A DNA stretch of 63,843 nt, filler included, from Aplysia californica (Eukaryota), in NCBI RefSeq assembly GCF_000002075.1. It is 3 parts of 3 records of this genome, joined end to end, with 100 filler letters (N's around TTAATTAATTAA, not from the genome) between each part and the next. Parts side by side here need not be neighbours in the genome. Positions count along the whole stretch, not along the records: positions 25,421 to 53,198 come from NW_004798213.1; 2 more parts are not named here. One strand, written 5' to 3'. Below are positions 27,720 through 53,198 of this stretch, piece by piece (position 1 is the first letter of the stretch; every line of letters starts with the position of its first letter). The translations under genes were made by a program, and so were the position numbers. The notes beneath the pieces are model-generated. The model was given only the letters and a program-made list of their open reading frames with translations. It searched no databases and was not told the origin of the DNA.

Positions 27720-27821
27720 CTACTCTCGGTAGTAGTCCGGGTTGTTCTTCGCCTTGGCGATCGTCCTTCTTAGTTTACGACGAAGGTCTGACACGGGTCT
27801 GTTATCAGGATCTCCACCGGC
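27720..27821 (-). CDS. distal terminal exon: [33 protein letters not shown]
   Basis: ctgcag acceptor, phase 0, TAG at 27720-27722; basic amphipathic helix. Confidence 0.8.
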   Translation of the reverse strand, partial: AGGDPDNRPVSDLRRKLRRTIAKAKNNPDYYRE

Positions 27822-30800
27822 CTGCAGATGACCAACCCACCCGTTACAACTACTGGACCATAATGCAGTGATTGGCGCTCGGTCATGAAAAGATTATGGA
27901 GTAGGCCTACCTTATAAGCATTACACATTTATTGTTATTTTTTCGGGCATAATCAGTTGCAATTGAACTATAGACTACGGAAACGTTAAAAACAACTGAA
28001 AAATAATAAGTTTTTGAAAGGTGCACCAAGTCCTGCACACTGTAATAAGATTATGAATCTGACAGCATTATTTGAAAGGAGTGACGCTCTTAACTTAGCT
28101 TATACATCGACAATAAGAAAAGATTAATGCCCACTCACTCTCTCTCCGAAAAAACTAAATTATGAACAGATGAATAGCTTTTCTAGATACACGAGAAAAC
28201 AAGATAAAATCGCCAGAGCAGTTGTACAAGCCAAAGGGCTCTAATGTGTTGGCAGGAAAATCAGATGCTGCTCAATATTGTCGCAGCAATTTGATTGCAT
28301 TAAACTTTGAAGTTAATTAAGTAAGCTTCTTCTTGTCAATGTTACGGTATTGTTGTAATACAAACGAGTCCAACTTTAAGTCAGCATATAATCATATCAT
28401 AACTTAGTTCAAATTCTAAAGTCAAAGACTATACTGTATGTGTATCCTTTAGCTCCGACCAAAGTGAAGTTCTAACAAAGCGCGGCAAAAGCACAAGAGC
28501 CAGCAGTTGTAACAGTGCGGACGCAAGCAATACAAGAACATGTTAAGCAAACATACATCATTTAGCTCAAAAGAGAGAAAAAAGAAATAATTGCATCTGA
28601 TAAAGATCTGGCGGTACCATTAATATCAACAAATAATGAATAGTAGCATTCATGCTTTCAGAGAAATTTGTTTAGATTTATAAGAAAATGCATGTATTGT
28701 AGTATTGTAACCACATAGAATAAATAAACAAAACATTCATTCCCTGAAGTATTGTAATATATAGTCTGTAACCGAATATTTGGTCTGAGAAAGAAAAAGA
28801 TGGACAGGAAAGAAGCAAAAAGCGCAAAGTTACGTGTTTAAGAATAAGCGTTAGAAAGAGACAATACATGTGCTGTCTGTGATAGGCATCTTGTGCTAAG
28901 AATGATAACATGCAAAAAAACATCTCACAAAAGTAAGGCCAATATAATAATCAATATAAAATTTTAAGTGTGCATAGTAAGAGCAAACCAGAAATAGACT
29001 CGTACAAATTTTAAAAAAAAGAAAAGAAAACGTGCATTGGATAAAATGTAGAATCATGCACTGGTTGATACAGAAAACAGTTAAATGAATCAAATTATGT
29101 TAGGAAACCAATTATGACATTTACAGCAAAGCGAGGTTATAGTGTGTGTTATTATTTTTTTTTTCTTTTACCTCCACGAACTATTTAAGAGCAGGAAGTC
29201 CTTCTTTGTGGAAAGGGAAAAGAATATCATCAGTGGTGGTTAAAACGTGTAAGGGGGGGGGGGGGGGGATTTGCATGGAAGCAATAGTGGATTCACCACG
29301 AGCTATGAGCCCGAGCTTGTATTTTTTGACAAAGTTAATTTACAACAACCGTTTATGTGTTGTGTATTCTTTACGAGGCAAAACAGGGAACCAGGAGCAC
29401 GTGGTGTGGTTGGTGGAGGGGGAAAGTGGAGAAATAGGTGAAAACAGGGGATGGGGTAGACAGGAGGGTGATTGTGACAAGCAAAGTGGTCGGTATATAT
29501 ATATNNNNNNNNNNNNNNNNNNNNNNNNNNNNNNNNNNNNNNNNNNNNNNNNNNNNNNNNNNNNNNNNNNNNNNNNNNNNNNNNNNNNNNNNNNNNNNNN
29601 NNNNNNNNNNNNNNNNNNNNNNNNNNNNNNNNNNNNNNNNNNNNNNNNNNNNNNNNNNNNNNNNNNNNNNNNNNNNNNNNNNNNNNNNNNNNNNNNNNNN
29701 NNNNNNNNNNNNNNNNNNNNNNNNNNNNNNNNNNNNNNNNNNNNNNNNNNNNNNNNNNNNNNNNNNNNNNNNNNNNNNNNNNNNNNNNNNNNNNNNNNNN
29801 NNNNNNNNNNNNNNNNNNNNNNNNNNNNNNNNNNNNNNNNNNNNNNNNNNNNNNNNNNNNNNNNNNNNNNNNNNNNNNNNNNNNNNNNNNNNNNNNNNNN
29901 NNNNNNNNNNNNNNNNNNNNNNNNNNNNNNNNNNNNNNNNNNNNNNNNNNNNNNNNNNNNNNNNNNNNNNNNNNNNNNNNNNNNNNNNNNNNNNNNNNNN
30001 NNNNNNNNNNNNNNNNNNNNNNNNNNNNNNNNNNNNNNNNNNNNNNNNNNNNNNNNNNNNNNNNNNNNNNNNNNNNNNNNNNNNNNNNNNNNNNNNNNNN
30101 NNNNNNNNNNNNNNNNNNNNNNNNNNNNNNNNNNNNNNNNNNNNNNNNNNNNNNNNNNNNNNNNNNNNNNNNNNNNNNNNNNNNNNNNNNNNNNNNNNNN
30201 NNNNNNNNNNNNNNNNNNNNNNNNNNNNNNNNNGGGGTGGGGCAGGGGTGGGGTGGAGGTTGGGAGGTGGGGGTTCATCCCAAAGTCGTGGTGGTGTAAG
30301 TAAGCACATGCCAAGCCAACACTTACAGCATAATAAGCAGGTATTTTTACCGAACTGCCTCCTTCGCTCCTGCAGATACAGAATGATGAGTTGTTTTTGT
30401 TTTTGTTTTTACCAATGCACAGAGAGCAACAGCAGCGGGCGGCAACAAGAAGGCTTGCAGCAATAATAACCACAAGTTATTCAATGGCATTGTGTTAGTC
30501 ACTTGCGTATCTGCCAAGTAGTTAACAGGCGCTTTCCTTTAATGACGTACATACTCGTCTGTTGTTCTAAAACACTGCTTAGCTTTTAAAAGCCCCCTTA
30601 TCACAAAAGCAAACTGACAGCGCGATTTAATTCTTGATTTTTATAAACCAAATGTACAAGTACTAGCAGAATACACACACTAAAAGTTAATTTAAAAAGA
30701 AGGCAACTGAAAAGTTCAACGTGTCATAGATTAAGTGTTTTTTCTAATACATGGAGTGTGGTAACTGGAACTGCGAGGGTAAAAAGGGAAAGCTGATTTT

Positions 30801-33800
30801 GTATTGGGGTCTTCCACTCTGCTTCTACGCTTCTCGAGATTTTGTAGGCGTCAGAAAAATCAAACACATTTATAAGTATGGGCTTGCAACAGGTGTGTTA
30901 ACTGTAAGTGTACGTATAATGAGTTACAATGAACGTGGTTTTAGGATATCAGACTGAAGTAAAAATAAGAATTGGCGTTGAACTGTTTTTGAACACCAGA
31001 GTCTGATGGCAGTGACGCATATTGTAATAACTTTCAAGTTGAAAAACCCCAAAGGAATTAGCTTTGAGTTAAACATTATATTATCAACATCAACATCTGG
31101 AGACGCCAGAACCAAACGGCGTGATTAAGTCTTAGTTTAACAAATCTGTTCAGCAATATAAAAATAAATATTTCATAGTTACACGTTGAGGTATTGACAT
31201 TAGTGAATTTAACATTATTACAGTAAAATAGTATTAATTGTGAACATTCCAACAAGTTAAAGGATCAACCATGCAAATCATTATTGGAAGAGATAGGAAC
31301 CTCTTTAACAAAAACACAACGAACGCTTCTGAATAAAAGTAGGAGAATAATCACATTTCTCTTTCTCTTATTATTTCACATTAATGTGTTTTTTTTGTTT
31401 TGCTTAACTTTTTAAAAGAAAATAATGGTTGGTTTGTCAGAACGTTATGAAAACTGAAGTTTTTGAAACAGAAACAAAAATCTTAAAGAGATACAGAGAG
31501 AGAATGAAAAGCCAAAGAATCTAGAAAAAACAAACGAACGACCTTGCTCGACCTCAAGAAGAGTTTATGCATGAACAATATAATAATAATTATATGTGCT
31601 ACATCTATATGTCCCACAACACAAAAAAGCATCTTGTCTGATAGTACACAAACTAAAGTGGTGAGTAAAAAGGGATCAGAAACAATCATCGAAATTCATT
31701 CATTTGGGCATGCGTTTACGGTCAGAGAGTGCTGGCTCTCGTGGAGCTTGTGATATAATATAATGTGCTGAATTTTGTGGGTTAGGGGGGGGGTAACTCT
31801 TGCAGATCAAAGGTCATTGTCTGGAGATTGGGTATAGGGAGCAATCAAATGGAAGCAACGGACCAGGTGAGTATAACCGGAGAGGTTTTCGGCGGTTTGT
31901 GGTGGGTGGAGTGAGGGGACAGGTTTTATAAGACAGGCGTACGGGATGTCAATGAAAAAAAATGGTTCAGGTGGGTTGGGAAGGGGGTGACTTTTGGGGG
32001 GGGGAGGGGTAAAGTTAAATGCCGAGCTTTTTCGTCGTATTGATACAACTTCGGAGGCTCAGTGAGAGGGAGAGAGGTTCGTAACTTGTTACATAAGGGT
32101 GTCATTGGTATCAATTTTCTCAAACAAATTAATAGGTGTATTCGGGCTTAGGAATGGTCTTAAACAGGGTTTCTTGTTATTTGTCTCTGATGGATGTCAG
32201 AGCAGGTGGGACCAAAGTGGGTAGAGTATGCAATTGTCAAAATTGGATAGATATTATTACTGGGTCATTTCCATGGGCTGACACCGAGATACCTGATAGA
32301 AGCTACGGATGCTTCTTTAAATTTGGTCTCCATTGGATCAGCAATTTTCAGTTTCGGTACAGGATGCAGCCTGGGCGAGGAGAGTCTCACCGGTGGCACG
32401 TAGATGGGAGGGGGGCGTGGTCTAAACACCGGCCGGGCTCGTTTGGCCACCACCCGTCTCAGGCTGGAGCAGGAGTAGCGAGGCTTGGCACAGGAGAGAG
32501 CAGAGAACGGTTAATGTCTGGGCTGATGCCAAACCTAGACATGCCAGAGAGCTTAACTATGCTCCGCGTGGCCCTAGTGCTTGAGTTTTAAGAGGTTTGA
32601 GAGAATCTTTTGTTGAAGTACGAAGTCGTATAAAACACAGAATAATAAAATGTCACTTTGAAGTGAAAGCGGAGAACTTCGTTCCCCAACATATTCACAG
32701 AGGAATTACCCCATTAAGGACGAGAAGAAACTATAATACCTCGGAAACCCGAAAGTTAAACCAGGGTTGACTACTCAGCTATGCCAACAAATATCGCCTT
32801 TTTAAGCGAACAAGTTATCAATTTTTACACCTTATGTATCGAAAGTCTATTGCCAGCTGACGTCTTTAAAGTCAGAAGAGTCGACACCCTTTTGACACTA
32901 ACATACTTACAGAATGTTTTTCATCTTAGCCTAACTAGTCTGTCAATGAACCCCACAAGAGCCACTGCGAGGGACAACTACAAGTCAGATGTCTACACGT
33001 TGGGATACGAGGGAAACTGTTTAGGGACAAAAGACAAGCTCTTTCTACTTGCAGACACAGTAACTATAATACAAAGAACATTTTGATAGAAAACAGGGGG
33101 GAAGCAGGGAGGTGTTTTTTAAAAATTATTCTGTTATACTGTTTTCACTTGACCTAGTTTCTATGTAAGCCATTCATTCGTGCTTGCCAGTGAACTAAGC
33201 TAGGGCAGAAGTTGGGCGGATGAATCTGACATCTCCCGCGGGTAGACATACAAACAATCACTTCCGGTACTACTTTAAACATGATCTGATCTGGCTGTGA
33301 TTTGAACATGGTTATGCCAAGGGGCGAGCCTCTTTTCCGGCAATGCCGAAATGTACCTTAACATTCCCTATAGTATTATAGAGGAGAATGACAACAGAAT
33401 TTATGTGAATGGGATTTGACACAATATTGTCACATTGGAAACTGTGGAGATTGTATTTGTATACCAACACGGGAAATCTCAAATACATCATAGATCTATA
33501 CTTTAAATAAGATGCTTGCAATAAGCAGAATGAACATAAAGTAAACATGTGCATTCAAAAAGAAAAGAAAAACAACCAATAGTGATAGACGTTCCAACGC
33601 TAATAAATGAATGAGTTCCAATACAGAAATAAAAGTACGCTGTGGAGGATGATACAATTAGTATGTACAAGAATTTGAATTAATGTATCGCAGTGGGAAA
33701 TTCCATGCACGGACAGTTTCTTTTTTAAAAAAAAGTGATAATAAATAAACGTTCACACCGGCATCAGATCAGACAGACAGGACCATGCAGCAGGCGCTGA

Positions 33801-36800
33801 GAAAGAAACATAAATTAGTGGGTATGATTTGTATTGCGCATGCACTCCGGCAACCCCTTTTTTGCAGAGAATAGTGGACAGTCACAAGGCTGCTATGATC
33901 GTACTTGCGATAGGTGCTTGTTGACATATTATCAGTGTCAAGGTAGCGATCAAGCAGTTGACGTTGGCGGTCCATCTTTTCTTGCACGTCCCGCACCTGT
34001 TCTCTGAGTCGGATATAACTAGAGGGCTGGTAGATAAGATCGTCAGGGCTGAGCCGGGACTCCACGCGGTACTGTGTACAGGGAGTGGGGGAGGGGGGAG
34101 GGGGAGGGGTGGTCGTCCACACGGGAGGTGGGGGGAGCACGGGAGCACATACATACAATTCGTGTTATGGTTTTGGGGAACACAAGATATGGCTATGGAA
34201 ACTAACTGGGGACATATTCTTATCATATCCAAAATGAGGAGCATTCCATTTCCAGCTGGGTTTTTTTTATTTTTTAAATTTTTACCTAGAGTTCTTTTAT
34301 GCACATTTTCAAATACCCTTAATAACCCGTAACTCTGTTAAGTGGTGTGAAATGCCACAAGCGAACATATCTGCTAACATAACAACTCTGTGATAGAAAG
34401 TCAGTAGCGAAATTTTCAGAAATGTGACAAAACCAAGAGCAAGTTTCTATTTTGGGGAGGTGATACTCTTTTTACAATTACGGTACCATAAAACAAGTTT
34501 AAAGTCTAAGTTTCGAAGACACACGGGTTGTTTTTACAACTTTAAATGATAAGAGGAGCACCAGTAGCATAATAACAGATTACAATTTCTGATCAAAAGA
34601 ATTGAACTTTTTGTCTGATAGAGTATCAAATTAAAAATTGTAAAAGTGTACAAACTTGAAAGTAAAACAACACTTTGGGGTTTACATTTACAGTTGTACA
34701 CTTCCTGGTGACTGGGGTGGGATAACCAAGTTGGATACAGGGAAAGTAATCTTGATGGGTTTTAATACTTTTTTCTTTTCGCATTCAATCTAAATCTATA
34801 TCAACAGGGAACTGTGATGTCAGCAGTAACTAACATATTTCATTCCGCCTTCAGTCGTCTAATAAACAACGGTTTCAGAAACAATGGCAGTCAGTGATCT
34901 ATGAACGCCTATTTTTAACCTTTCAGATGATATCAAATAAAATGGATGCACTACAAAACATTCACACGTGTCTTCGTTTTGAGATATATCTGGGCTGAAC
35001 TTTTATGCCGAGTTCACGACCCAGAAAAAAATGACAGTTGAAATAGATTTATTATTCTTATTCTATAAATGCAACAATGTTGGGCACTTCCTTGTTGTAA
35101 CAAATATAATATTAGGAACTGTATTTCCACACTGAACTATTGCATTAAGCTTTTCCCCATTATACACACACTTTATTCTGATTGCGAGACCCTAGGGGCT
35201 TACCTGCCAGGAATAGACGTTCCTAGGTTTTGTGAAACCGTCTACGTCTCTGATTGCCTTTCTGTCCGATTGTTTTGGCTAGAAGGTGGGAGGTAAAGGA
35301 AAGGGAAGGAGGGATCCAGTCAAAGGGTGATGGGGAACAAATAAGGGAGAACGGCCACTGCACAAAGGTATCATATTTTTGGACACTAAACATATTCCAT
35401 TGTGTACAAAGACAAGGAATGTGGTGTTACAGCCTGCACTTATCAAGCTCAACCCCTCACCCACCGCCCCTTTTCACAATGATCTTCTGCCAGAAAGTCA
35501 GAAAGGGATTAACTTTTGTCGCATACCGGTATCGCCAAAGGATTGGTACGTTCTCAGTCTTAAAGGAACGGAAAGTTCTCGATTGTCTATGTACTCGATG
35601 GATAGACGATATATTTGGAATACTCAGAAAACACTACGGACGTTTTTTTTTCAGGGCACACAACATCAGGTACATAAAGAGAGGGGCGTTTTTTTTCGGG
35701 AGTAATCATCCCCCCACCCCCTCAAGGCCATTAGATATCATCAAAATTTCACAATTCGATTTCAAGTCACTCCAAAGGTGTCTCACGTGAGTCTTTATCA
35801 GTGTCGGAGACATTTCAAACGCCTTTATCTATGAAAAGATAATGGTGGCATTTTCGGTCTTCTTTGCCAGAATACATTGCTACACTATGATGATATTGAA
35901 AGCTCAACGTTGTTTGACTCAGTGTAAGAAACCAAAGTATTTTGACTGGAGTCGGGATGCCAGATCTCACCAAAGTGTTTTTTTTCCATACTGTGAGAAG
36001 GTTTCCTTCGTCAACGAGATTACAGTGACATACATGCAGCTGAGAGAATACAATATACTACTCCGAGCTTCAAATGCTGTCTCGAGCAGATTCGTTTCCA
36101 CATTGTTCTTTCCTTTTCAACGTCCCCTGTCTTCATACCTGTGCTCATTGTAACAGTAAGTTGGGGGGGGGGGGGTGGAGCACTTTTGGAATCGTAAGTG
36201 TGGGCTCTAATACTCACATTGCTATATCAAAACAGTTTGTGTGGGATAATAAGGGCGAGTTATGACTTGAATTCAAAACAGGGTGCTGAGATACTGATGG
36301 GCAATAAGGTGGAAATGCATGCGTTGTGGGGAGCAAAAATGATCTATCGTGACTGGTGTGAGCCTTCATCTGACAAAGTACATTGTCTTACACCTTTTTA
36401 GATAGCAGGACTGCAGGCTTTCTTTGGGGGATGATGTCTTAAACAGACGAGGTCTTAAAGTTTGCTTTAAAAAAACCTCAGTTATTTGTTACTTAGAACT
36501 GTCCTATTAGGTAGTCTTAAGAGTTCTAATTAGACTTCGGCTCAAGGGGTACTACTTTGAAAGAAGGAACGTGGATACAGTCTAAACCCAAAACACAAGT
36601 TCACAGGCAGTCATGCACACACCCACACGTACACACACGCACGCACACAAAGCATACACATGCACACCACACACAGGTGTGTACATAAGCATACACGCAC
36701 CCACCCACATACAGACACACAAACACACAACAACATACACACCACACACACGCGCATACACACATACATACATACACACGCACACACAAACACACATACA

Positions 36801-42800: not shown

Positions 42801-45800
42801 ACATTAATAGAGCTACCACTACGATTAGGAGTAGGAGGAGGCAAATAGATCAAAACAGGCCTCGCGGGGGACTGGGAAGAGGAGGAGGAAGGCGCCTTCC
42901 TCTCTACCTTGGTGAAGGAAGAGTATTGCGCTTGTTGGGCCTGCTGGACTGGGGCAGACCTGGGGGCGGGGGGAGCCGTGCTGGCCCGCACACGCCTGCT
43001 AACGGCAGAGCTACGAGGGCTAGCGTGTTGCTCCGTGTTGACCTGCGGGGAGGAGGAGGACGAGGGTGGTCACCATTCAGGAGGAAGGGGAGGTCGACAG
43101 AGGGGGTCCATCGTGGACAGAGCTGGGACTTCTACCAAAGAGTTGGGAAAGTATAGCCAGAAAAGACAACGGAGGAAAACGAAAAAGAAAATAACTGTGC
43201 GAGGATAAAGAAAAACAACTAAAAATAAACTAGAACTAATAGAAACTAGCAAATCTAAAAAAGGAGAAAGGTTTCGGGCTAAAGAAAAAGGAGAGAGTGG
43301 TCCCCCTTCTTCAGTCTGCTTCCAACTAAATATTTCAAATGCCGTGCACTCTTAGGTGTGTTCTTGAAAGTGATTCAGACTGAGATTGTTTGTCAAGATT
43401 GGATTTTTAATGATTGTTTTATTTTTCAAAATCGTTTCTAGATCCACATCTGTTCTACAGACGGTGCTCAGATAATCATATGGAGTCTCTAAGGCCCACG
43501 CGGTACCTATACCCCCGCACAAAGACAAAGATATTCAAGAAAAATTCCCCCCCCCCCCCTTTCCCTCATCCTTCCTGTAGAAAGCATCACAGCAGCTTGA
43601 CGATTTGTATCTATTAAAAAAGGAGAGCACGAGAAAATATAGAACAAACCTTGGAAAAACCAGTGTGTAAACAATATTCCTTATCAATGAGGCATTAAAA
43701 TACAGACCCGTTAAAGGAATGAATAACTAAACTTCTGTCCCCGTCATCTCCTAGAAGGTATCATGATTAGGATCATTTTGACAAGTCAATGTATACTCAA
43801 GCAAAGTCAGACAGCCCAAAAATTTTAATCACTCATAAACAGCCAAATTTAGAGGTGAAATTGGAAAACATGACACCCTCTCTGCCCACCCTCACCCCCT
43901 TAAAAAAGTTTTGTTTGAAAGGCACTTCTCACTAGTTATCCTTCCCTCATGGTGCCTGCAAGAACAGATGTAATCAAGCAGGAAGAAGAGAGTACCCAAC
44001 CTCTCCTTTTCCATCTCTTATGGGTTGATAATGTAATTTAAAAAATGCTCTTCAGAAAAGTCTTTTCTGGAATAGTCTAAGTGGGGATTCAGGAAAAAAG
44101 TAAACAAAAGCAGTAATGGCTACTTTATGATGACAATAAAATTGCATGCAATGTCTGCTTCAAACAGTTTACAACAAAGATGGAAAACAATCATGAAGGA
44201 TACGGTATAAAAAAAGAAAAACAGAAAATAATGATCGATAAACAATAATTTTGAAAAAACCAAAAGAAATTTCCGAAATGAGACCAAAAAAGGACGTTAA
44301 GAAATAAAAGAATTTTTAAAAAAGGAGTCTAACTGGAGACAGAAGGAGCACATTCGTCTTTGGAGTTTTTAATGTTCAAAGAGAATATCTAAGACAACAC
44401 AGCACTCCGCAGGAACAGGATTCAGAATAGTAAGAGACTCTCCAAAATAAGGGAAGAACAGCCCAAAAGAAAGCCTGGCTATTTGAAACAGGAATGAAGC
44501 ACCAACTGAATCTGAGACAGACATGAGATCAAAGTCACAAATGCCAGAAGACTCGTCCAAGCTTCTCCGAGCAGAGCGGTAGGATGTCTCCTTGGGGACC
44601 TTTCACTTCTGATGGCGTTTCTTCGTGACGTCACTCACACTCGATGAATCTGCATCCACTTCTGCAAACTGTTTTGTTGAGTTTTATTATTGTTTGTTTA
44701 TTTGTTATGTTTTGTGTTTGTTTTCAGCCACCAGTGCCTTCGTATCTGTGTTCTTTGATGTTCACTCCTGTCTGAAAGATTCTTTTTCAATATTCGATAC
44801 ATTTTGTCGCAGTGGAAATGTCGGCCATTCCTGCTATGTTATAATTGGTCACAGCGCAGATTTCAAAGATTCAAACGGTCATGTTACGGAACGGACGAGA
44901 GCAAAACGGTCACGAGAATCGGAAAACGGCAGGTCTTCGTTTGGTCTTGTTTTGTTTCGTCTCAAACGCATACGTTTTTCAACCCCCATCTTGCTTACAC
45001 AATGCAAACACATTATCAATAGCACAGAGAGCAAGCGTTACACGAGCACAGCATTCCTGAGAAGAACGTATTTCTTTGAAAGAGTATCAAGTTCACACAA
45101 AGGTCTACATCGTACACAGAAAGAAAAGTGCAACCAAAAGTATAGTTTGTTTCATTAACACGCTGGAGAAAAGCTAAAGTAAATCACAGAAAAAAACATG
45201 CATTGGTACGTATTAACTTTTTCAACTAGATGTATAAATAGAAGCTACCAAGTGTCCGCGAAGTCTCTTGCCAAAACGTGCCTAGCAAAAACCAAAGCAA
45301 TAAAGCACGAACAACAAATCGTTCTACGAACTCAGTCAAAGAAATCAACTGACCATGTTCAGTCGACACAGCACGTTTTTTTCTTTCTCACCGAGTTCGG
45401 AGACTGGTTGTTGAATATTCTTTATAGGTCCCACTGTCCCTTAGACGAACAAATTTAAGCATGGCTGCAGTTTTGTTTACTGAAGCAATACCAAGAGGTA
45501 CACTTTTCCCTCAATGCCATAGGTGAGCTAAGAATGGCCTTTCAGTGCACAGTGAATTCGCGGACACCTTGTAATAAAGCGATACTTACCGGCCGAGCAC
45601 ACAATGAGAAGACAACAAACAGCTTTTAAAGCATTGTGTGGATCTAAAAGAGCTTTCTAAGCGAAGGCATGCTACCTGAACAGAGCCATGAAACGAGATC
45701 ATTACGAGTGCTCAGCGAAAGGTCATTTTGACTAAAACTTTATTTCACCTCGAATTGAAGGGATTAACCGTTGAAAGCTAAAAAGATCGAGCTCGATTTT

Positions 45801-48800
45801 TAAAATAACCACAAAGCCATTTTTCAAAAGTAAAACAAAATATGCAGTCAGCCTAACTGCTCTAAAGGGTGTCCTGTCCTGAAGATTTGGACTCTTAGTG
45901 AGCGATTCCCATCTCTTCAAAAGTTTTTAAAAAAAAATCGAAATAATAAATGTGATTCTTGACAGAAAAAATGCAATGTCTGCAGCACGAGCTGAATTTA
46001 ACAGCTTGAGAAGTAGGCCAACACGGCAGCAGGCGTGTATCGTTCAGGAAGTGGTTGGAAGCACTTTATCGACAGAGCAAAGAGTAAGCACAGTGAAAAA
46101 AAACCTTAGTCAAAATGACCCACATATCTCAGCGCCTGCCGAGCACAAGCGAAAACAGCAGCACATGAAAACACGTTGTTATTGCAGGTAAAGCATACGT
46201 TATATTTCATTGACAATACCCGAGACAGTCCCAATACTTGGACATCAGGAGAATTGGCAACACAGTTGGTTTTTGACTGAGGGATCTATCTATATGCATC
46301 TTCTTTTAAACTCAAGCTTCATCAAAAAAGCACTGAACTTGAAACGTTAATCTGAATCTGTGGTAAACATTTCAGTATGAAAAAAGAGACTACCTTAATC
46401 TTTCCAATATGAAACACTAATAATAAAGATGTAGTCACAAAATGTAAATAAAAAGCAAAAAAGTGAATATTTTTTCTAAAAAGAAAGAGACAGAAAACAA
46501 ATGTAAATCTCTGAGCACTTCATACTGAGCGTAGAAAAGACAGGTCAAACCAGAGGGCCAGGAGTGGCTTCCTAGGCTCTGCTTGAGTGGCCTGAAACAC
46601 CTGCCTAATAATGAACAAAAGGATAAAAACCTACATGAAAAGTCCACCACAGATCTCATATGAAATGATGGGAACCCCCAAATGATGATACGTGAATCAG
46701 TAATTTGTTTTTTAAAGTAATTTTTCTTTAGTCGAACGTAAGACTTCGCAGATTACAAGCAACATAAACGCGTCCCTCGTCTTGAACGTCAAAACAGTAG
46801 TAAGAATGAAGCGTGAGTTAAGCATGCTGTGAGTTAAAGCATTCAAAACAAACTATGATAATGATTAAATGATTATGATAACAACCGAGTCCTTGTTTCT
46901 TAGCGGTCATTTAGCTGTTATGGATACATTAGGCACTAACAAAGATGCTTCTTGTAGCATGCATTGCTTTTTACATCTATCTAACTCATGTTCTTAGCTC
47001 CTTGTCTTAAAACAAAATGTAATCATTCAACTTAACAAAAAATAACAAAGATTTCTGAGTTCAAGTATAGCTTTATGTTTTTTAAAATGTTAGATCCAAT
47101 TACAGAAATGACAATGAATGGGAAAAATACAAAAGCAAATAGATAAATGCGACTTGCAGAATAGAGCGCAAAAGCTTTCTTTCCAGTACACAAAAGCAGC
47201 CAAAAGCGTACAAGGAAACTTTAAAAGCACTTATAAATTCTCATATTATAAAAGTATACGCTAAGACAGGGCAAACAAACATACTGTGCGCGGGGTACCG
47301 ACGTGGCTACTTTGATATAAAAAACTAGTTACGTCCATCCACAGATTGGATAAATATGTGATAGCAAGGAAGTCACACTTCCGCTTCGTTTGAAAGGGCA
47401 AAGACTCAGATCGAATTTCTAAAGACGTAGATCTATTCAACTTGCAATTATACTTTTTTTTCGGGCTTCTTTCGTAAAATAAAGAACGGAAGAAAAAAGG
47501 GGATATCAAAACATGGCCACGCCGGTCCCATGGCGACATAGTGTTTGCTGCACAGATAAATCGTTGGGTCCCCGGAAACAGGCACAATTTTCGTTATTAA
47601 AAATTAAATACTTTCCAAGGTTCTATTTTCTTGTTTCGTCCCCTTACTATTTTTTTTAGTGAAACAACCTCTGGCCATGTTATTTAGAGGATAAGCAAAG
47701 CCAAATAGGAGTCACAGACCGCATTTTGGAATTGCAACTCTATAACTGAGTAACCCATTGGCCACACTCTTCATTTGCCAAAAAAGGGTGTGAGAATGCA
47801 ATTGGATTTTCGGCTGAATAAGGTCTCGATTTTATCACCTCAAATTTGAAAAAAAGTAAGGGGGAAGGGGGAGGGGCAGGGCACGTTGACACCGGGGAGC
47901 GCGTCTTTAAATATAAGGGAGCGGTTTTTTAAACATTCGAGGGAGAAAGGGGGGAGGGTACGTCACTCTTTCCGGGGACCCAAAACGCCCAGAAAAACCT
48001 GCAGAGCGTCCTCGGAAAACCTCTAAGCGTTACCTTGATATTAATTTTCTCTAGCACGGTAAGCCTGTTGGGGGTGTCTCCGCCTCCGCCGCGACCGCTG
48101 CCTCGGGCCTGGTAGACGGGCAGGTGGAAGCTTCGGCCAGCGGGCACGCTGGTCTCACTCACCACCAGTGGGTACACATCCACTCTGTGAGACTGGCCGT
48201 CGTCCAAACGCGACCGGTAGGAGGAGACGGGCACGCTGTTTTCTCGGCCTGCGATGTTAAGCGGCATGTGAATGGTGCGGTGAACATATGAGGAGGGGCT
48301 TCGACTGGGGACGACGCTACTACTGCGGCTGGCTGGCCGATAGTCGCCCTTGTCTACATGGTCCCTAATGTCTGAGCGCACATCGCGCAGGCGGTCCAGG
48401 TACTTGCCCAGAAAAGAATCCGCCGGGGTGGTTGGCTTGGGGGTTATGCCCAGAATTCTCTCATCTAAGCCTATGGTGGAACCCTTTAAGGGGATGGGTG
48501 GGGGGTAGTAGCGGAAACCATACCTATTCTTCCCATCTGGAGAGACTGCGCTTCCTTCAACACTTAAAACCAAGCTGGCGTTTTTGTAGGATGGGAGATT
48601 TGACTCGGCCATGACTGCCTTTGCACGTGCCGCAGTACTGGAAACAATCGAATCTATCATGGAGTTGTCGGCGTAAGATGGCTTTGTTAGGGAGTCATCC
48701 AGGTTCTTAGTGTAGGATGGGACAAGGGACACACTGGGAAGGGGATCTTCAGGGTAGGGCGAGGATCTGTGAGTTACAGAGGGCGTGGTTAAGGAAGGAA

Positions 48801-51800
48801 GGGGGCGGATGCTGGGTGTGTCGTCCGACGTCAACTCGAGGATTCCCTGTCGGGAGGGGCCAAAGGGAACGTAGTCGTACATTTCAGCCATATCAGCATC
48901 ATACGAGCCGTCATATGGGGCGTCGTAGGAGCTCAACTTGAGGGCAGACACACCAGAGGGTCTCGGAGAAGAATACGTACCATACTCGCTTGCTGTCTCA
49001 TAGTAAGGCTCGTCTTCTTCGTCTTCATCCTCAGCGCCATGCTTCGAATAGGTTAGAGCAGCCGGTCCTCTCAAGATCTTGTACTTCCTTCTGTAAGATC
49101 CAGGCTCGTATTCCTCTCCATCGTCATCGACGTAATCATTATCGTCGTCGTCATCATAGCGGGTTCGGTAAGACGACGGGTACTTCTGAGAGTATGTAAG
49201 GCTAGAGGGGACGTAACCTCGGTAGACTTTGGAGCTGCTCCTTGTGGACAAAGGGCTGAGCACGGACGGATCGGAGAGATAGGACCTATAGGACACGGTG
49301 GACCGCATGTCGTTCGAACCTGACGCTGTGGGCGGATCCTTGAGGAAAGATTTGTACGAGATTGAAGAAGCGCGGGTGTTGCCGGAGAGCGGGGCCGCTG
49401 GGGGCATGGAGGAACCCCTCAGGTAAGTGTTGATCCGGCTAGACAGGAGAGAATTGGGCGACGGAGCTAACGGCAAGTTGGACCGAAGCAGCTTCTCCTG
49501 CTTTCTGTAGGGCACCACGGCCCGGGGAGGCGAGGGAGACCGCACTTCTACCGGTGGGAGTGACCGGAAGCGTTTGGATTGACGGCCAGTCCGAGTTTCA
49601 CCCGAGCGAGACGGTGATCGGCTGGACGGACGCTGTGTGGACAATTGGGAAAACCCGGTTACTTAGCAGCGGGCGGGGGGAGACAATTCGACGCGCGGTT
49701 AACAATAAACAGGGGAAACTCATTAAAAAAAAGTAAACGCATCGTATTTTGATTGCATGCACGATCACTTTTTTTTTTTTGCTTCGTGCATTCTGGGGCA
49801 TGGTTCTCACGCTTTAGACTCTAACTAGTCGGGTTTAGTTGAATTTACACACATAAAGGACGGGAGAAATCCGAACGGTATGTTGACATTCACAAGGGAT
49901 GCTTAAGGGTCCCGCATGGCTTCGAAAACTAGACAGGTATGTCAAATCACGTGCAAACTTAACAGGTTTGAGTTTTCATTCAATAAAGTGGAAAACGCAT
50001 GTACCTTACCACGGAAATCGACTAAAATATTTTAAAATGTAAAACAATGATCTTACAATTCTTCTTAAGATTTAAATTCTCAAGATCTCTTCTCAACAAC
50101 GTACTGCCGATGGAGAGAAAACGTTTTTACACACATATCCTGATGCTTTGAATTACGTCTTTAGATAGTGGCGTTGTTCTTTAAAATAAACGGAATGTCC
50201 ATTTTTAGGTTGCGCACTTTGGGTGGCATTCAACGGAACGGTAGCATTCGGGTAGATGTGGAGAGGTGGGGTGTGGCTACTGAGTGCGGATTACGGACTA
50301 GTCAACGGAGGAAGGTATTGTAGTTTGCGGTGCCATGTCTTTAATGCAGGTAAGGTCTAGGGTGCAGGTGTGTCATGGGGTGGTAAAGAGGTAATGCAAA
50401 GTGGTTGTACTCTTGTGCATGTGAGTTGTCTTTTTAAAATTCATTTGTGGGGGTTTGTTTTCACACTTTTGTTTCAGTGCTTTTACTCTAGCAACAGGTG
50501 GCTGAATGCTAAAGAAAACGTGTTCTGTGAGGTAAGTTCTGTTTGCATCCACAAATAGGTAAGACACGCCTCCAGGTGAAATGGGAGTAAACTGGTCAAC
50601 TGAACAGAACAGGCTCTATATTGGGTTCACATCTAGGAACATTCCTAAGGGCTGGGAGGGAAATAAAACCCAGTGTTTTATTATGTGTGGAGACACCCGA
50701 ACAGAAGGTTGGCAGAGGAAGGGTTCACTCCCTTTTGTCGGAGGAATGTGATCAAAAATGAAAACCAACGAAAGAAAAGAAAATGGAGAATACTGAACAG
50801 GTTGGTTAAACAAAGGACTTTTATAGGTGAATACTGGAGGTCAAAACTAGTCTACTTCAAGGAGCCAAAAGGGGAAGGTTGGGAGGGGTTTAAATTTTGG
50901 AACAAGGACCAATAAAGGATAAAAATAAAATAAAAGGTATCAACACATACTGAATTTCACTCTAGATACTGAACAATTCATGTAGAGATCTGTGGAGGAC
51001 GTCTATGGATTGAGGAATGAGCATAATGAAGGTGAATTGACAGCACTCACGGATGTGTATCAAAGTAAATATCAAAATAAAAAGCGAAAAGCAGTACAAT
51101 TGCAAGTTGATGTGTACAGACTGAAAATGTGAGGAATTCTACCTAAGAGATTGATCGTTGAGAGGATAGCGTATGATACAAAATAGTGTAGAATAGACTA
51201 TGTAAAAATGAACATATTATTGAGATAAAAAAATTTGATTTGATGAAACACATGAAAGCCACACAAAAGTGAGGAACCTGATGAGCCTGAAAAAAGAGAA
51301 CATTTTAATGAAAAGAAATGTTTCATATTATCTCCATGCACAAGTCTATGCGCCTCATCACGGTATTTTCCTTATTTTTCGAAATTTCAATTTCATGGAT
51401 ACCAACTGGTTTCAGTAATTACACAAGAGCACTAACATTTTGAAGGTCCTCTTTCGTTTAAAAAACAATTCCAGTTTTGGATTAAAAACAAAATACCTCC
51501 CCCCCTTTCCACCTAAAAAGTCTGTTTCTTGTTCGCAGAACGTGATGAAGGCATTCTTGCTCAAGAAGTGAAGGAAGCAAAAATAACGTTCACAGCAATA
51601 CTAACAATAGGTTTGGTGTTCTTTGTCCTCAAATCGACAACAAGAGGATTATACAGCAGTCTATCAGAAAGTTCGATCATGACAAGACATGGACTAGTAC
51701 GTTTGGGAAAAGAGACATGTCTTCGATATGAGTGGAATAACTTAAGAAAGTTACAGTAATCAATGTAGTTTCCGATGTCTACAAGAAGGAAAATTTCGTT

Positions 51801-52962
51801 GCAAAAGGCATATCCCGTTTCTGTAGACCATTGGTGTTTCTTCAAACCATTCTTATGATCGTTCCTTTCGGAGACGGACGTTAAACCCGGAGGCCCCGCC
51901 TCTTAAATAACCTAATAGTGTTGATAGGGGCGTTAAACCTATACCATTTCACCATTCATATGAATGTGAGTGAACATAGCCAGTTTACTTTCCACTGGAG
52001 AACAGAACACGCAAGGAGATGCTCTTTCTGTAATGTAAATGTTCTACGCTCTCGTCGACACAATGTAGGAGATGCCTTTTGCAGACACACGAAAATGGTA
52101 GGGTCCGTAGTAACTGCCATAAATAAAAAGACTATGATTTCTGAGAGAGTAGAACATGGGGTAAGCATGATAATTGAAACGTAGACAAACAAACGACGAT
52201 AGCACACATAAAAGATAATACTTTAAACAGAATACTTCTTTTTAAAAAATTTTTAAAAATTCAACGTATTCTATGTTGGAAAACAAAGACATATTGTGTG
52301 ATAGCTACACAGAGAGGCACGGGCCTGCCACATCGGGACTTCTATGAGAGGACATGGGCTACTCACGATGGCCGCGTTGGCGTTTCTCAGCAGCTCATAA
52401 TCCCTCCCTCTGGACTTGGCCGCGGCATCGTAATTGTCCTCCAGGACGGCATTCGAAAAGTATTCGACTCTGTTGATGCTGTCATCGATGCCGTAGTCAT
52501 GGCGTGAGGGCTTGTCTGCAACACAGGGGGAGTAACGTGTTTGTTTTTTGCTATACGTATATCATTCCGAAGGTCACGCTTAGATTATTCCAAACTTTTG
52601 CATGCCACTAATACCATTCTCTGAAGCTAGTGTCTTCTTCGTCTTTGAGTTCCTTAGCTAAATTTCAGGGGAAGTCGACTGCTAGTTCTTTAACCTGCAG
52701 TGCAACTGATTTTTTTACGCATATAAGTTTTTACTAATTCGTAGGGCTCATTGGATGCAGCCATATTTAAAGTGAGTATGAAACGCATAAAAATATAGAC
52801 GTCACCACTGGCATTATTGTAACAAGATTTCTCTTAAGTACCTAAACAAGAAAGTGCCCCATCTTGCATTATTGATTGTGGATGATGATATTCCGGGTGT
52901 GCGGTCGACTGATAGGAGCGAAAGACAATGGGACAGACTCCGATGAAGAAGGGCGCCTTACA

Positions 52963-52996
<34 letters not shown>

Positions 52997-53143: not shown

Positions 53144-53198
<55 letters not shown>

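What the first reader, a model, noticed from the sequence alone, without database searches (positions are those of the whole stretch)
27720..52515. Unnamed modular gene: phase-0 cassette exons, two giant exons and three alternative C-termini
Seen: after the exon at 52367-52515, every exon starts in phase 0 and every internal exon ends in phase 0, so any combination stays in frame. There are two giant disordered exons (533 and 293 codons) and three separate stop-containing exons (41852-41902, 32265-32483, 27720-27821). Inference: there are at least two protein classes with a shared N-terminus. Class A is ...NANAAI|VNTEQH...NRSK|[16 protein letters not shown]. Class B is ...NANAAI|RPSS...KINIK|AAIIGSRME...|EGVYY...|YRVESR...HSSL| followed by either ...SPWK* or ...[21 protein letters not shown] recognise no globular domain. 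From memory, unverified, it resembles the poorly characterised molluscan muscle/myostracum 'RS-rich' proteins. This is the best candidate for an undescribed system in the window.
Basis: partly seen in the sequence, partly recalled or inferred. Interest (0 to 1): 0.8.

Follow-up and report, generated by a model that had tools for sequence, protein, structure and literature searches.

The report
Aplysia RS-rich muscle protein gene
This is a real, heavily alternatively spliced sea-hare gene (LOC101852657). It encodes a mostly disordered protein, the Aplysia counterpart of the mussel 'RS-rich proteins', which are found only in molluscs, are reported as very abundant in mussel adductor muscle, and have never had their function studied.

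Summary
The piece is Aplysia californica scaffold KB942339.1 and holds most of one minus-strand gene, LOC101852657 ('uncharacterized protein', RefSeq isoforms X1-X7).

Confirmed:
- There is a run of phase-0 cassette exons and two large alternative exons, E2 (533 codons) and E3 (293 codons).
- RNA-derived contigs from four runs join E1 to E3, E3 to E4, a 45-codon short form of E3 to E5, and E1 directly to E5.
- None of X1-X7 contains E3.

Wrong or incomplete:
- The stop exon 41902-41852 sits at intron-level depth and has no splice joint.
- The 32483-32265 exon is probably a cassette exon ending at 32293. Its stop codon comes from reading on into the intron.
- The real E6 donor is at 33905, not 33886.
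- Exons at 35278-35204 and 30369-30327 were missed.
- The second real C-terminus (RRYK* or DATSKA*, one exon read in two frames) lies outside the piece.
- The assembly gap sits in an intron, and no modelled exon crosses it.

The family is the mussel 'RS-rich protein-1/-2', known from myostracum shell proteomes and ranked sixth in adductor-muscle expression. It has no Pfam domain and is predicted to be mostly disordered. Every named relative is a mollusc. Its function is untested. I infer a muscle-filament-associated adaptor tuned by splicing.

The parts
52367..52515 (-). E1, a constant exon. It encodes (Y)[49 protein letters not shown]. Its first two bases complete a codon begun in the upstream exon E0, which lies outside the piece.
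   Evidence: Matches X1-X7 exactly. AG acceptor and GTGAGT donor. Its 3' end appears as the loose end at the E3 and E5 acceptors in RNA contigs. It is the most widely conserved module across molluscs.
48034..49632 (-). E2, a large alternative exon of 533 codons, phase 0-0. It is Ser/Pro/Tyr-rich with conserved blocks such as …[34 protein letters not shown]… and …[20 protein letters not shown]….
   Evidence: Present in X1-X7. 46-57% identical in heterobranch gastropods, and recognisable in bivalves and, by alignment, a cephalopod. Held at 100% of sampled words by 18 runs. Weak beta and helix segments in the AlphaFold2 model.
42164..43042 (-). E3, a large alternative exon of 293 codons, phase 0-0. 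It is very basic (net charge +30) and has four conserved RxRxx[S/T] sites. It is absent from RefSeq X1-X7.
   Evidence: Exon-level depth in 4 of 4 runs. E1 to E3 loose ends and an E3 to E4 GT..AG joint. Homologues at 44-56% identity in Bulinus, Arion and others that carry the same N-terminus and E4. Motif statistics, charge.
42908..43042 (-). E3-short, the first 45 codons of E3 ([25 protein letters not shown]…SSFTK), produced by an internal donor ACCAAG|gtagag.
   Evidence: Joint from 42908 to 37628 (E5) with GT..AG ends in 4 of 4 runs. The same architecture appears in Arion P0047 and in plankton-derived short isoforms. In Perna the MS/MS peptide GSSQ|AALVGNR spans a short-E3 to E4 junction.
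39647..39760 (-). E4, a cassette exon of 38 codons ([38 protein letters not shown]).
   Evidence: Present in X1-X4, X6 and X7, skipped in X5. E3 to E4 joint, plus a loose end at 39647 reading AGA CGC TAC AAG TAA, which is the splice to the distal RRYK* exon, in 4 of 4 runs. Conserved across molluscs.
37566..37628 (-). E5, an exon of 21 codons ([21 protein letters not shown]).
   Evidence: Present in X1-X6. Acceptor used from E3-short in 4 of 4 runs and directly from E1 in run X17. Its donor splices to 35278.
35204..35278 (-). E5b, a cassette exon of 25 codons ([25 protein letters not shown]).
   Evidence: Present in X1, X2, X4-X6, skipped in X3. The loose end at 37566 in 4 of 4 runs reads its first codons. 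Conserved in bivalves and a cephalopod.
33905..34071 (-). E6, 167 nt, phase 0 to 2 ([56 protein letters not shown]). It contains the only confidently predicted helix.
   Evidence: X1-X6. Sequence at the donor. AlphaFold2 helix at residues 700-730, with a pLDDT block mean up to 89. Conserved as …[13 protein letters not shown]… across molluscs.
32293..32483 (-). E7a, a putative alternative cassette exon of 191 nt, phase 0 to 2 ([63 protein letters not shown]). By reading frame it would replace E6.
   Evidence: 46% identity over 50 aa to the variable exon of short isoform P0060 (E = 3e-4 against the 113 proteins fetched so far), and a visible match to P0061. AG acceptor and ATCAG|GTATCT donor that fits the E7 acceptor phase. 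Not in RefSeq models and not tested with reads.
30327..30369 (-). E7, a mini-exon of 43 nt ((K)[14 protein letters not shown]) with an alternative donor at 30351 (SEGGSS). It lies 94 nt from the assembly gap.
   Evidence: X1, X3 and X5 use the long form; X2 and X4 use the short form. Splice sites. The motif GSVNIPxYYA is conserved in short isoforms.
27720..27821 (-). E8, the proximal terminal coding exon ([33 protein letters not shown]). It forms a basic helix followed by NPxYY.
   Evidence: X1, X2, X3 and X5. Conserved in gastropods, the bivalve Solemya and a cephalopod. Weak helix in both AlphaFold2 models.
41852..41902 (-). I judge it not an exon.
   Evidence: Intron-level depth only and no joint in 4 runs. 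No match in any homologue. In relatives E3 splices to E4 instead.
29505..30233 (.). Assembly gap (N), inside the intron between E7 and E8.
   Evidence: No exon of the model crosses it. The gap was not filled or looked up.

Best explanation
The piece carries most of one gene, Aplysia californica LOC101852657. It is the sea-hare orthologue of the mussel 'RS-rich protein-1/-2'.

Shown:
- The protein has constant ends: an N-terminal helix module (E0/E1) and C-terminal helices (E6, E8).
- Between the ends, in-frame cassette exons are combined freely. The middle can be the 533-codon E2, the unrelated and very basic 293-codon E3, a 45-codon short form of E3, or none of these.
- E4, E5b and the two forms of E7 are optional.
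- There are two terminal exons: E8 inside the piece, and a distal exon outside it that is read in two frames.
- Products therefore range from well under 200 to about 800 residues. They are predicted to be almost wholly disordered.

Inferred:
- The protein is an abundant adaptor associated with the muscle cytoskeleton or myofilaments. Its conserved end helices and short conserved blocks would dock onto filament proteins.
- Alternative splicing would set the length and charge of the linker.
- The conserved RxRxxS/T sites of E3 would allow control by a basophilic kinase.
For: Gene and splicing.
- RefSeq X1-X7 map exactly to the exons.
- RNA contigs of four runs from four studies show 100- to 1000-fold contrast between exon and intron depth. 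They also show canonical joints for E3 to E4 and E3-short to E5, and loose ends proving E1 to E3, E1 to E5, E4 to the RRYK* exon, and E5 to E5b.
- The same E2-or-E3 choice behind an identical N-terminus is seen in Arion (P0006 against P0029) and in Mytilus (P0049 against P0083).

Family.
- A profile search of 1.84 billion representatives gave only 68 hits. All the named ones are molluscs: gastropods, bivalves, a chiton and a cephalopod.
- The Plakobranchus orthologue is deposited as 'Rs-rich protein-1'.
- Perna viridis contigs that match M. coruscus RS-rich protein-1/-2 at E = 0.0 and 4e-146 carry the family's motifs and exon order. Their MS/MS peptides map onto my mytilid hits with 6-13 of 11-16 residues identical, most at 9 or more.

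Muscle link.
- 'RS-rich protein 1' is the sixth most expressed gene in Mytilisepta adductor muscle, at TPM 27,745, against 28,950 for myosin and 39,709 for paramyosin (PMC5549309).
- It is recovered with actin, filamin, calponin-like and alpha-actinin proteins in myostracum proteomes (PMC6641155).
- It is up-regulated together with myosin, calponin-like and transgelin-like transcripts (PMC7023338).

Disorder and motifs.
- No Pfam family matches.
- AlphaFold2 gives pLDDT 42 and 54, with only helices and weak strands.
- E3 has four RxRxx[ST] sites (P = 0.0075 against shuffles) at columns invariant in the alignment, and net charge +30.
Against: - No experiment on function, location or binding exists for any member in the papers searched.
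- The muscle evidence comes from bivalves, not Aplysia. The tissues of the Aplysia runs are coded and unknown to me.
- Transcript abundance and co-purification do not show that the protein binds filaments.
- The phospho-site reading rests on motif statistics alone.
- The link to M. coruscus AKS48138.1 and AKS48164.1 is indirect. It runs through a depositor's name, Perna sequences read in a supplement, and mytilid orthologues. I could not align those two records themselves.
- E7a and the exact set of full-length exon combinations are not established.
Confidence: 0.6

Rival explanations
1. It is the mollusc counterpart of arthropod myofilin. That would make it a small, largely disordered protein threaded among myosin tails or paramyosin in thick filaments at roughly one copy per myosin, with isoforms for different muscle types.
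For: - Protein-language-model feature searches put Myofilin (PF15929) clusters at ranks 1-3 for a short isoform (0.81, 0.81, 0.79) and at rank 3 for the long isoform (0.80).
- Mussel transcript levels equal those of myosin and paramyosin.
- Myofilin likewise has a conserved N-terminal piece, a disordered remainder and several isoforms (PMC9820631).
Against: - Feature scores below 0.9 are reached by a third of shuffled proteins, according to the tool's own note.
- No PF15929 match appeared for 7 exon peptides, 16 full-length members or 22 short isoforms, even at E up to 10.
- Profile searches of PDB sequences found no match.
- The N-terminal LKG motif of myofilin is not present. Molluscs have TKGHSVLK there instead.
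- The thick-filament location is untested.
Confidence: 0.12
2. It is an adaptor of thin filaments, dense bodies or muscle-to-shell attachment plaques. This would explain why it is recovered in the myostracum layer.
For: - It is found in myostracum with alpha-actinin, filamin, calponin-like proteins and actin.
- The basic E3 module (+30) and the conserved C-terminal NPxYY would suit binding to acidic filaments or PTB-type domains. This is inference from sequence.
Against: - It is also found in nacre fractions.
- Muscle proteins in shell proteomes may be carry-over.
- No binding data exist.
Confidence: 0.2
3. It is a secreted shell-matrix (biomineralisation) protein.
For: It is listed among shell-matrix proteins of Mytilus coruscus and Perna viridis.
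Against: - There is no signal-peptide-like hydrophobic N-terminus in E0/E1, nor in the longer mollusc N-termini.
- It co-occurs with many intracellular muscle proteins.
- It shows very high muscle expression.
- Aplysia has only a reduced internal shell (my own knowledge), yet exon depth is high in all four Aplysia runs.
Confidence: 0.03
4. It is an SR-type nuclear splicing or speckle protein, as the name 'RS-rich' might suggest.
For: Arg and Ser are the two most common residues.
Against: - There is no RRM or any other Pfam domain.
- RS/SR dipeptides are not enriched over composition (P = 0.10 and 0.20), and the longest alternating run is 3 residues.
Confidence: 0.02
5. The exons belong to two or more separate genes, for example with E3 as a nested gene in an intron.
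For: E3 is missing from RefSeq X1-X7. E2 and E3 share no detectable similarity.
Against: Direct E1 to E3 and E3 to E4 junctions appear in 4 of 4 runs. Arion and Mytilus transcripts carry an identical N-terminus and E4 around either exon.
Confidence: 0.01

Closest known systems
RS-rich protein-1 and RS-rich protein-2 of Mytilus coruscus (GenBank AKS48138.1, AKS48164.1), with their Perna viridis homologues (CL2840 contigs)
   Same: - Same family. The shared features are an N-terminal …STKGHS… segment and the DDxYDxAxKSRxRDxxLL helix, an E3-type start (VDTETFASPRSAVTSRRVR against Aplysia [21 protein letters not shown]), E4 (AALVGNRVE…RKPRSxYAANKMRELK), E5b/E6 (…LMSWQ|YRIESR…, KEQMDRHRQLMDRYL), and an Arg/Ser-rich composition.
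- The Plakobranchus orthologue carries the same name.
- As far as I can see, '-1' and '-2' are splice forms of one gene. The Perna contigs for both sit in one assembly cluster and share their first ~150 residues.
   Different: - The mussel records are E3-type forms only. The Aplysia RefSeq models are E2-type only.
- Sequence identity between gastropod and bivalve proteins is low outside the conserved blocks.
- I could not align the two GenBank records directly.
- None of them has a known function.
Myofilin (Pfam PF15929), a thick-filament protein of arthropod muscle
   Same: A small to medium, mostly disordered muscle protein with a conserved N-terminal piece and several isoforms. Myofilin is about 1:1 with myosin. 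The mussel RS-rich transcript is about level with myosin. It is the nearest named family in the feature search.
   Different: No sequence or profile match. No N-terminal LKG motif. The two families occur in different phyla. The location of the mollusc protein is unknown.
Genes for muscle proteins with combinatorial cassette-exon splicing, such as troponin T or Zasp/Enigma family members (my own knowledge)
   Same: Constant ends, many small symmetrical in-frame exons, and isoform sets that probably differ by tissue.
   Different: Those proteins have known folded or filament-binding domains. This one has none recognisable, and its two large alternative exons are unrelated in sequence.
Classical mutually exclusive exons that arose by tandem duplication
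   Same: In the four Aplysia runs E2 and E3 are used as alternatives after the same donor (RefSeq models).
   Different: E2 and E3 are not homologous (best BLASTP E = 0.4) and differ in length. Both are phase 0-0, so nothing in the reading frame enforces exclusion. Both can also be skipped together (E1 to E5). Some predicted models in other species contain both (P0033, P0034).

Membership tests
Mollusc RS-rich protein family (M. coruscus RS-rich protein-1/-2) | Conserved N-terminal module (…[ST]KGHS…, then xDDSIxRxEYxSNAxLEDxYDxAxxSRGRDxxLLRxANxAI) | tested here: met
   The E1 translation matches this module. TKGHSVLK is encoded just upstream of the RefSeq ATG in exon E0. It aligns with gastropod, bivalve and cephalopod members. 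The Perna RS-rich homologue shows the same module.
Mollusc RS-rich protein family (M. coruscus RS-rich protein-1/-2) | E3-type basic module that starts V[ND]TE.H/F.SPR..V.SRRVR, followed by E4 (AA[IL][IV]G.[KR].E…RRPRS.[FY]AA.K.RE) | tested here: met
   Window E3 and E4. Alignment A2. Perna sequences and junction peptides. The RNA joint E3 to E4.
Mollusc RS-rich protein family (M. coruscus RS-rich protein-1/-2) | C-terminal helix module YR[VIL][ED]SR…KMDR[QH]RQL[LM]DRYL | tested here: met
   E6 of the window. Conserved. Present in the Perna RS-rich protein-1 homologue.
Mollusc RS-rich protein family (M. coruscus RS-rich protein-1/-2) | Significant direct alignment to AKS48138.1 and AKS48164.1 | not testable with these tools
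   These records could not be fetched. The link is indirect: a depositor's name on the Plakobranchus orthologue, Perna homologues at E = 0.0 to those records, and Perna peptides mapping to mytilid members of my profile hits.
Mollusc RS-rich protein family (M. coruscus RS-rich protein-1/-2) | High expression in muscle | not tested
   Shown for Mytilisepta adductor muscle. The tissue of the Aplysia runs is unknown, and only high exon depth was seen.
Myofilin (PF15929) | Match to the Pfam Myofilin model | tested here: not met
   No hit for exon peptides, 16 full-length members or 22 short isoforms, with E up to 10.
Myofilin (PF15929) | Conserved N-terminal 'LKG domain' of about 35 residues (PMC9820631) | tested here: not met
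   The N-terminal conserved motif in molluscs is TKGHSVLK. The only conserved LKG lies inside E2 (…PPIPLKG…), not at the N-terminus.
Myofilin (PF15929) | Location among myosin tails in thick filaments | not testable with these tools
   Needs immuno-EM or cryo-EM.
SR proteins / RS-domain proteins | RRM domain plus a run of RS/SR dipeptides | tested here: not met
   No RRM. RS/SR counts are not above shuffles, and the longest alternating run is 3 residues.
Tandem-duplicated mutually exclusive exons | The alternative exons are homologous and of similar length | tested here: not met
   For E2 against E3 the best BLASTP E-value is 0.4. The lengths are 533 and 293 codons.

The most novel reading that the evidence does not exclude
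The RS-rich protein family is a major, so far overlooked structural component of molluscan myofilaments. It would be a functional analogue, or a very distant relative, of arthropod myofilin or flightin. It would sit on or in the paramyosin-rich thick filaments at near-stoichiometric amounts. Splice-selected modules (acidic, Tyr-rich E2 against the +30 phosphorylatable E3) would adapt filaments to different muscle types or to catch-like regulation.
Probability: 0.15. Interest if true: 0.65.

Novelty: new member of a known kind. Interest (0 to 1): 0.4.

Why it matters
Bivalve data place this protein's transcript level with myosin and paramyosin in adductor muscle. Yet it has no domain, no fold and no assigned function, and it is known only as a line in proteomic tables.

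This locus adds three things:
- The two named mussel proteins are very probably splice forms of one gene.
- The gene's modular exon plan is shared by gastropods and bivalves, and its conserved modules are also recognisable in a chiton and a cephalopod.
- In Aplysia the E3 forms lie at exon-level depth in all four runs, yet none of the seven RefSeq isoforms retrieved contains E3.

That gives a concrete exon map for designing isoform-specific probes, antibodies or knock-downs in a tractable mollusc. If the protein is a filament component, it bears on how molluscan muscles are built and regulated.

Tried and rejected
- Pfam scans of every exon, of 16 full-length homologues and of 22 short isoforms gave nothing above noise.
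- Profile searches of PDB sequences gave nothing relevant.
- AlphaFold2 on the long form (pLDDT 42, pTM 0.26) and on a short form (pLDDT 54, pTM 0.18) gave no compact fold. I therefore ran no fold search, which would have been meaningless.
- E2 against E3 shows no homology, so they are not duplicated exons.
- The myofilin lead from the Atlas feature search was not borne out by any sequence test.
- The RRYK* and DATSKA* ends are not in the readable letters of the piece. They were found in the same scaffold beyond the piece's 3' N run, as a single exon read in two frames.
- Literature searches by LOC numbers and accessions found nothing. A search for short Aplysia isoforms using P0061 as query returned only plankton-derived relatives.
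- Rfam found nothing, tandem repeats were only simple repeats, and the plus-strand ORFs had no Pfam match.
So I cannot say whether an E3-bearing Aplysia model longer than 513 aa exists in the databases.

Full report
**What the piece is**

A word search with the 533-codon exon returned a 100% match to 'uncharacterized protein LOC101852657 isoform X3 [Aplysia californica]'. Its 90% cluster holds RefSeq isoforms X1-X7. The gene lies on scaffold KB942339.1 of GCA_000002075.2. The piece is bounded by N runs on both sides. The gene is on the minus strand.

**Checking the observation**

I mapped X1-X7 back onto the window by exact peptide matching and read the splice sites. This gives the following exon map.

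| Exon | Window coordinates | Notes |
|---|---|---|
| E1 | 52515-52367 | constant |
| E2 | 49632-48034 | 533 codons |
| E4 | 39760-39647 | optional cassette |
| E5 | 37628-37566 | |
| E6 | 34071-33905 | |
| E8 | 27821-27720 | ends in YYRE* |

- E6 ends in phase 2 at AA|gtacga, and E7 starts with the third base of that codon.

**The assembly gap**

The gap at 29505-30233 lies in the intron between E7 and E8. No exon frame in the model crosses it. The exons on its two sides are joined in RefSeq models and in orthologous proteins (…IPAYYA|AGGDP…), so order and orientation are consistent. The ORFs that one search lists across the gap are artefacts of the N run.

**RNA evidence**

Eighteen runs of the same organism, from five studies, hold E2 completely. 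I laid the contigs of four runs from four studies on 37500-43499. Exons stand at depths of hundreds to about 15,000, and introns at 0-18. Joints have GT..AG ends on the minus strand, so these runs behave as RNA.

- E3 (43042-42164), which is absent from X1-X7, is fully covered at exon level in all four runs.
- E3 is joined to E4 (42164 to 39760) in 4 of 4 runs.
- An internal donor gives a 45-codon short E3 (43042-42908), joined to E5 (37628) in 4 of 4 runs.
- The loose end at the E3 acceptor is the reverse complement of …GAGCTGCTGAGAAACGCCAACGCGGCCATC, the last ten codons of E1, in 4 of 4 runs. So E1 splices to E3 and skips E2.
- In run X17 the same E1 end abuts E5, so both large exons are skipped.
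- The loose end after E4 reads AGA CGC TAC AAG TAA (RRYK*) in 4 of 4 runs.
- The loose end after E5 reads the first codons of E5b.
- No contig joins E2 to E3, although contigs can drop rare forms.
I reject it.

**The three proposed C-termini**

- E8 is real.
- The RRYK* exon is not in the piece. It lies beyond the 3' N run of the piece, at L001:39950 (cag|AGACGCTACAAGTAA). The same exon read one base out of phase gives the DATSKA* end of X6.
- That exon has a good donor at 32293 (ATCAG|GTATCT). This leaves two bases, exactly what the E7 acceptor needs and the same phase as E6.
- I therefore read it as a probable cassette exon (E7a, 32483-32293) that replaces E6.

**Relatives and conservation**

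- E2 has relatives at 46-57% identity in Physella, Lymnaea, Biomphalaria, Arion and Elysia.
- E3 has relatives at 44-56% identity (35% for the weakest hit in the search table) in Bulinus, Arion and others.
- Arion transcriptome proteins P0006 and P0029 have identical N-termini and identical E4 and RKYK ends, but carry E2 or E3 respectively. The Mytilus proteins P0049 and P0083 show the same pattern.
- So the choice between E2 and E3 is shared by gastropods and bivalves.
- E2 and E3 are not homologous to each other.
- A profile of eight orthologues, searched against 1.84 billion representative proteins, gave only 68 hits.
- Every named hit is a mollusc and is called 'uncharacterized' or 'hypothetical'. 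They include Haliotis, Babylonia, Patella, Pomacea, Gigantopelta, Nucella, Bradybaena, Ostrea (17 or more isoforms), Ylistrum, Mytilus (9 isoforms), Solemya, Dreissena, Mya, Tegillarca, the chiton Liolophura and the cephalopod Argonauta.
- An exon-by-exon BLAST of all fetched members shows a combinatorial architecture throughout the family.
- Short forms of 150-300 residues also exist, consisting of N-terminus, E5, a variable exon, E7 and E8. They come from 1-2.4 kb mRNA-like contigs of marine metatranscriptomes.

**Structure and motifs**

- No Pfam family matches any exon or member. PDB sequences give no match either.
- AlphaFold2 with alignments gives mean pLDDT 42 for the 787-residue form. 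The one confident helix is in E6 (residues 700-730). There are weaker helices in E1 and E8 and weak strands in the conserved core of E2.
- A 173-residue short form gives pLDDT 54 and only two helices.
- E3 has net charge +30. It has four RxRxx[S/T] sites, against 0.84 expected from shuffles (P = 0.0075). These sites fall on the invariant columns of the E3 alignment.
- RS/SR dipeptides are not enriched, and there are no RS repeats.

**What the family is**

- The Plakobranchus orthologue (P0034) contains E1, E2, E3, E4, E5b, E6 and E8. It is deposited as 'Rs-rich protein-1'.
- The name comes from Mytilus coruscus shell-proteome entries AKS48138.1 and AKS48164.1.
- In the Perna viridis shell proteome (PMC6641155), contigs CL2840.1.2.3 and .7 match these entries at E = 0.0 and 4e-146.
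- The supplementary tables print the contig sequences. They show the family's N-terminal module, an E3-type start, E4, E5b/E6 and the KEQMDRHRQLMDRYL helix.
- All four contigs belong to one assembly cluster and share their first ~150 residues. So 'RS-rich protein-1' and '-2' look like splice forms of one gene.
- The MS/MS peptides include EATRAL|VDTETFASPR and GSSQ|AALVGNR, which span the E1|E3 and short-E3|E4 junctions. This is protein-level support for those splices in a mussel.
- Seven of these peptides map onto my mytilid hits with 6-13 of 11-16 residues identical, most at 9 or more.
- In the Mytilisepta virgata tissue atlas, 'RS-rich protein 1' is the sixth most expressed gene of the posterior adductor muscle. 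Its TPM is 27,745, against 28,950 for myosin and 39,709 for paramyosin (PMC5549309).
- In Mytilus haemocytes it rises together with myosin, calponin-like and transgelin-like transcripts (PMC7023338).
- I found no paper that studies its function.

**How it most likely works**

Shown:
- One gene has constant ends and freely combinable in-frame modules.
- It has two real terminal exons.
- Its products run from well under 200 to about 800 residues and are predicted to be disordered.

Inferred, at roughly 45%:
- The protein is an abundant adaptor of the muscle cytoskeleton or myofilaments.
- Its conserved helices and short blocks would dock on filament proteins.
- Splicing would set linker length and charge.
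- The E3 sites would allow control by a basophilic kinase.

A more specific reading, a functional analogue of arthropod myofilin, is suggested by two feature searches and by the myosin-like transcript level. It fails every sequence test I could run and lacks the N-terminal LKG motif described in PMC9820631. I give it about 12-15%. Readings as a secreted shell-matrix protein, an SR-type protein, or separate genes are unlikely or refuted.

**Limits**

So an E3-bearing Aplysia model longer than 513 residues cannot be excluded. The length window was 161-513 aa.
- I could not fetch the two M. coruscus records or any myofilin sequence.
- The tissues of the Aplysia runs are coded.

**Verdict**

This is a real and correctly spotted modular gene. 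The gene is annotated, and the family is named but functionally unknown. It is a new member of a known, poorly characterised kind. Interest is moderate, mainly because a protein this abundant in mollusc muscle still has no known role.

Noticed in passing
L001:9960-10054 (same scaffold, about 1 kb beyond the piece's 5' N run; outside the window piece): The first coding exon of RefSeq X1-X7 (MPVRRQQPVFVPRASYA…) has an AG acceptor 42 nt upstream of its ATG. The reading frame stays open there and encodes GTKGHSVLKRRTHS, the N-terminal motif conserved across molluscs. Longer N-terminal isoforms that start in a further upstream exon are therefore likely in Aplysia, but they are not among the seven isoforms retrieved (X1-X7). 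Several N runs lie upstream.
   Followed up: partly
L001:39950-39971 (beyond the piece's 3' N run): One distal terminal exon is read in two frames. After phase-0 donors (E4, short E7) it gives RRYK*. After the phase-2 donor of E6 it gives (K)DATSKA*. Its first 29 bases equal the loose end seen after E4 in all four RNA runs.
   Followed up: yes
Perna viridis supplement of PMC6641155 (contigs CL2840.1, .2, .3, .7): The mussel 'RS-rich protein-1' and 'RS-rich protein-2' homologues share an identical N-terminal ~150 residues and one assembly cluster. The two named proteins are therefore probably splice isoforms of one gene. I did not find this stated in the papers read.
   Followed up: partly
P0033 (971 aa, unnamed in the library; N-terminus resembles the Biomphalaria proteins) and P0034 (1407 aa, Plakobranchus): These models contain E2 and E3 in tandem. 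Either some species include both exons, or these are gene predictions that string all exons together. No E2 to E3 contig was seen in the four Aplysia runs.
   Followed up: partly
window 53144-53198, 52965-52993, 36612-36827, 27534-27566: Simple repeats in introns or flanks: (GTCT)n at the very edge of the piece, (AG)n, a degenerate CA-rich array, and a short A-rich repeat.
   Followed up: no
window 39146-43421 (introns): Low-depth intronic contigs of run X2 (2011), and single contigs of X8 and X11, differ from the assembly by scattered single-base changes and 1-2 base indels. These are probably allelic differences between animals.
   Followed up: no
Recurring short motif in E2, E3 and E5 of many members: A motif of the type [ST]xxL[KR]AS[RA]PP, or RA[SG][ST]xPP, recurs in several modules and species. 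Examples are Aplysia [10 protein letters not shown] and VRASTAPP, and bivalve GLKASAPPKP. It may be a repeated docking or phosphorylation site.
   Followed up: partly
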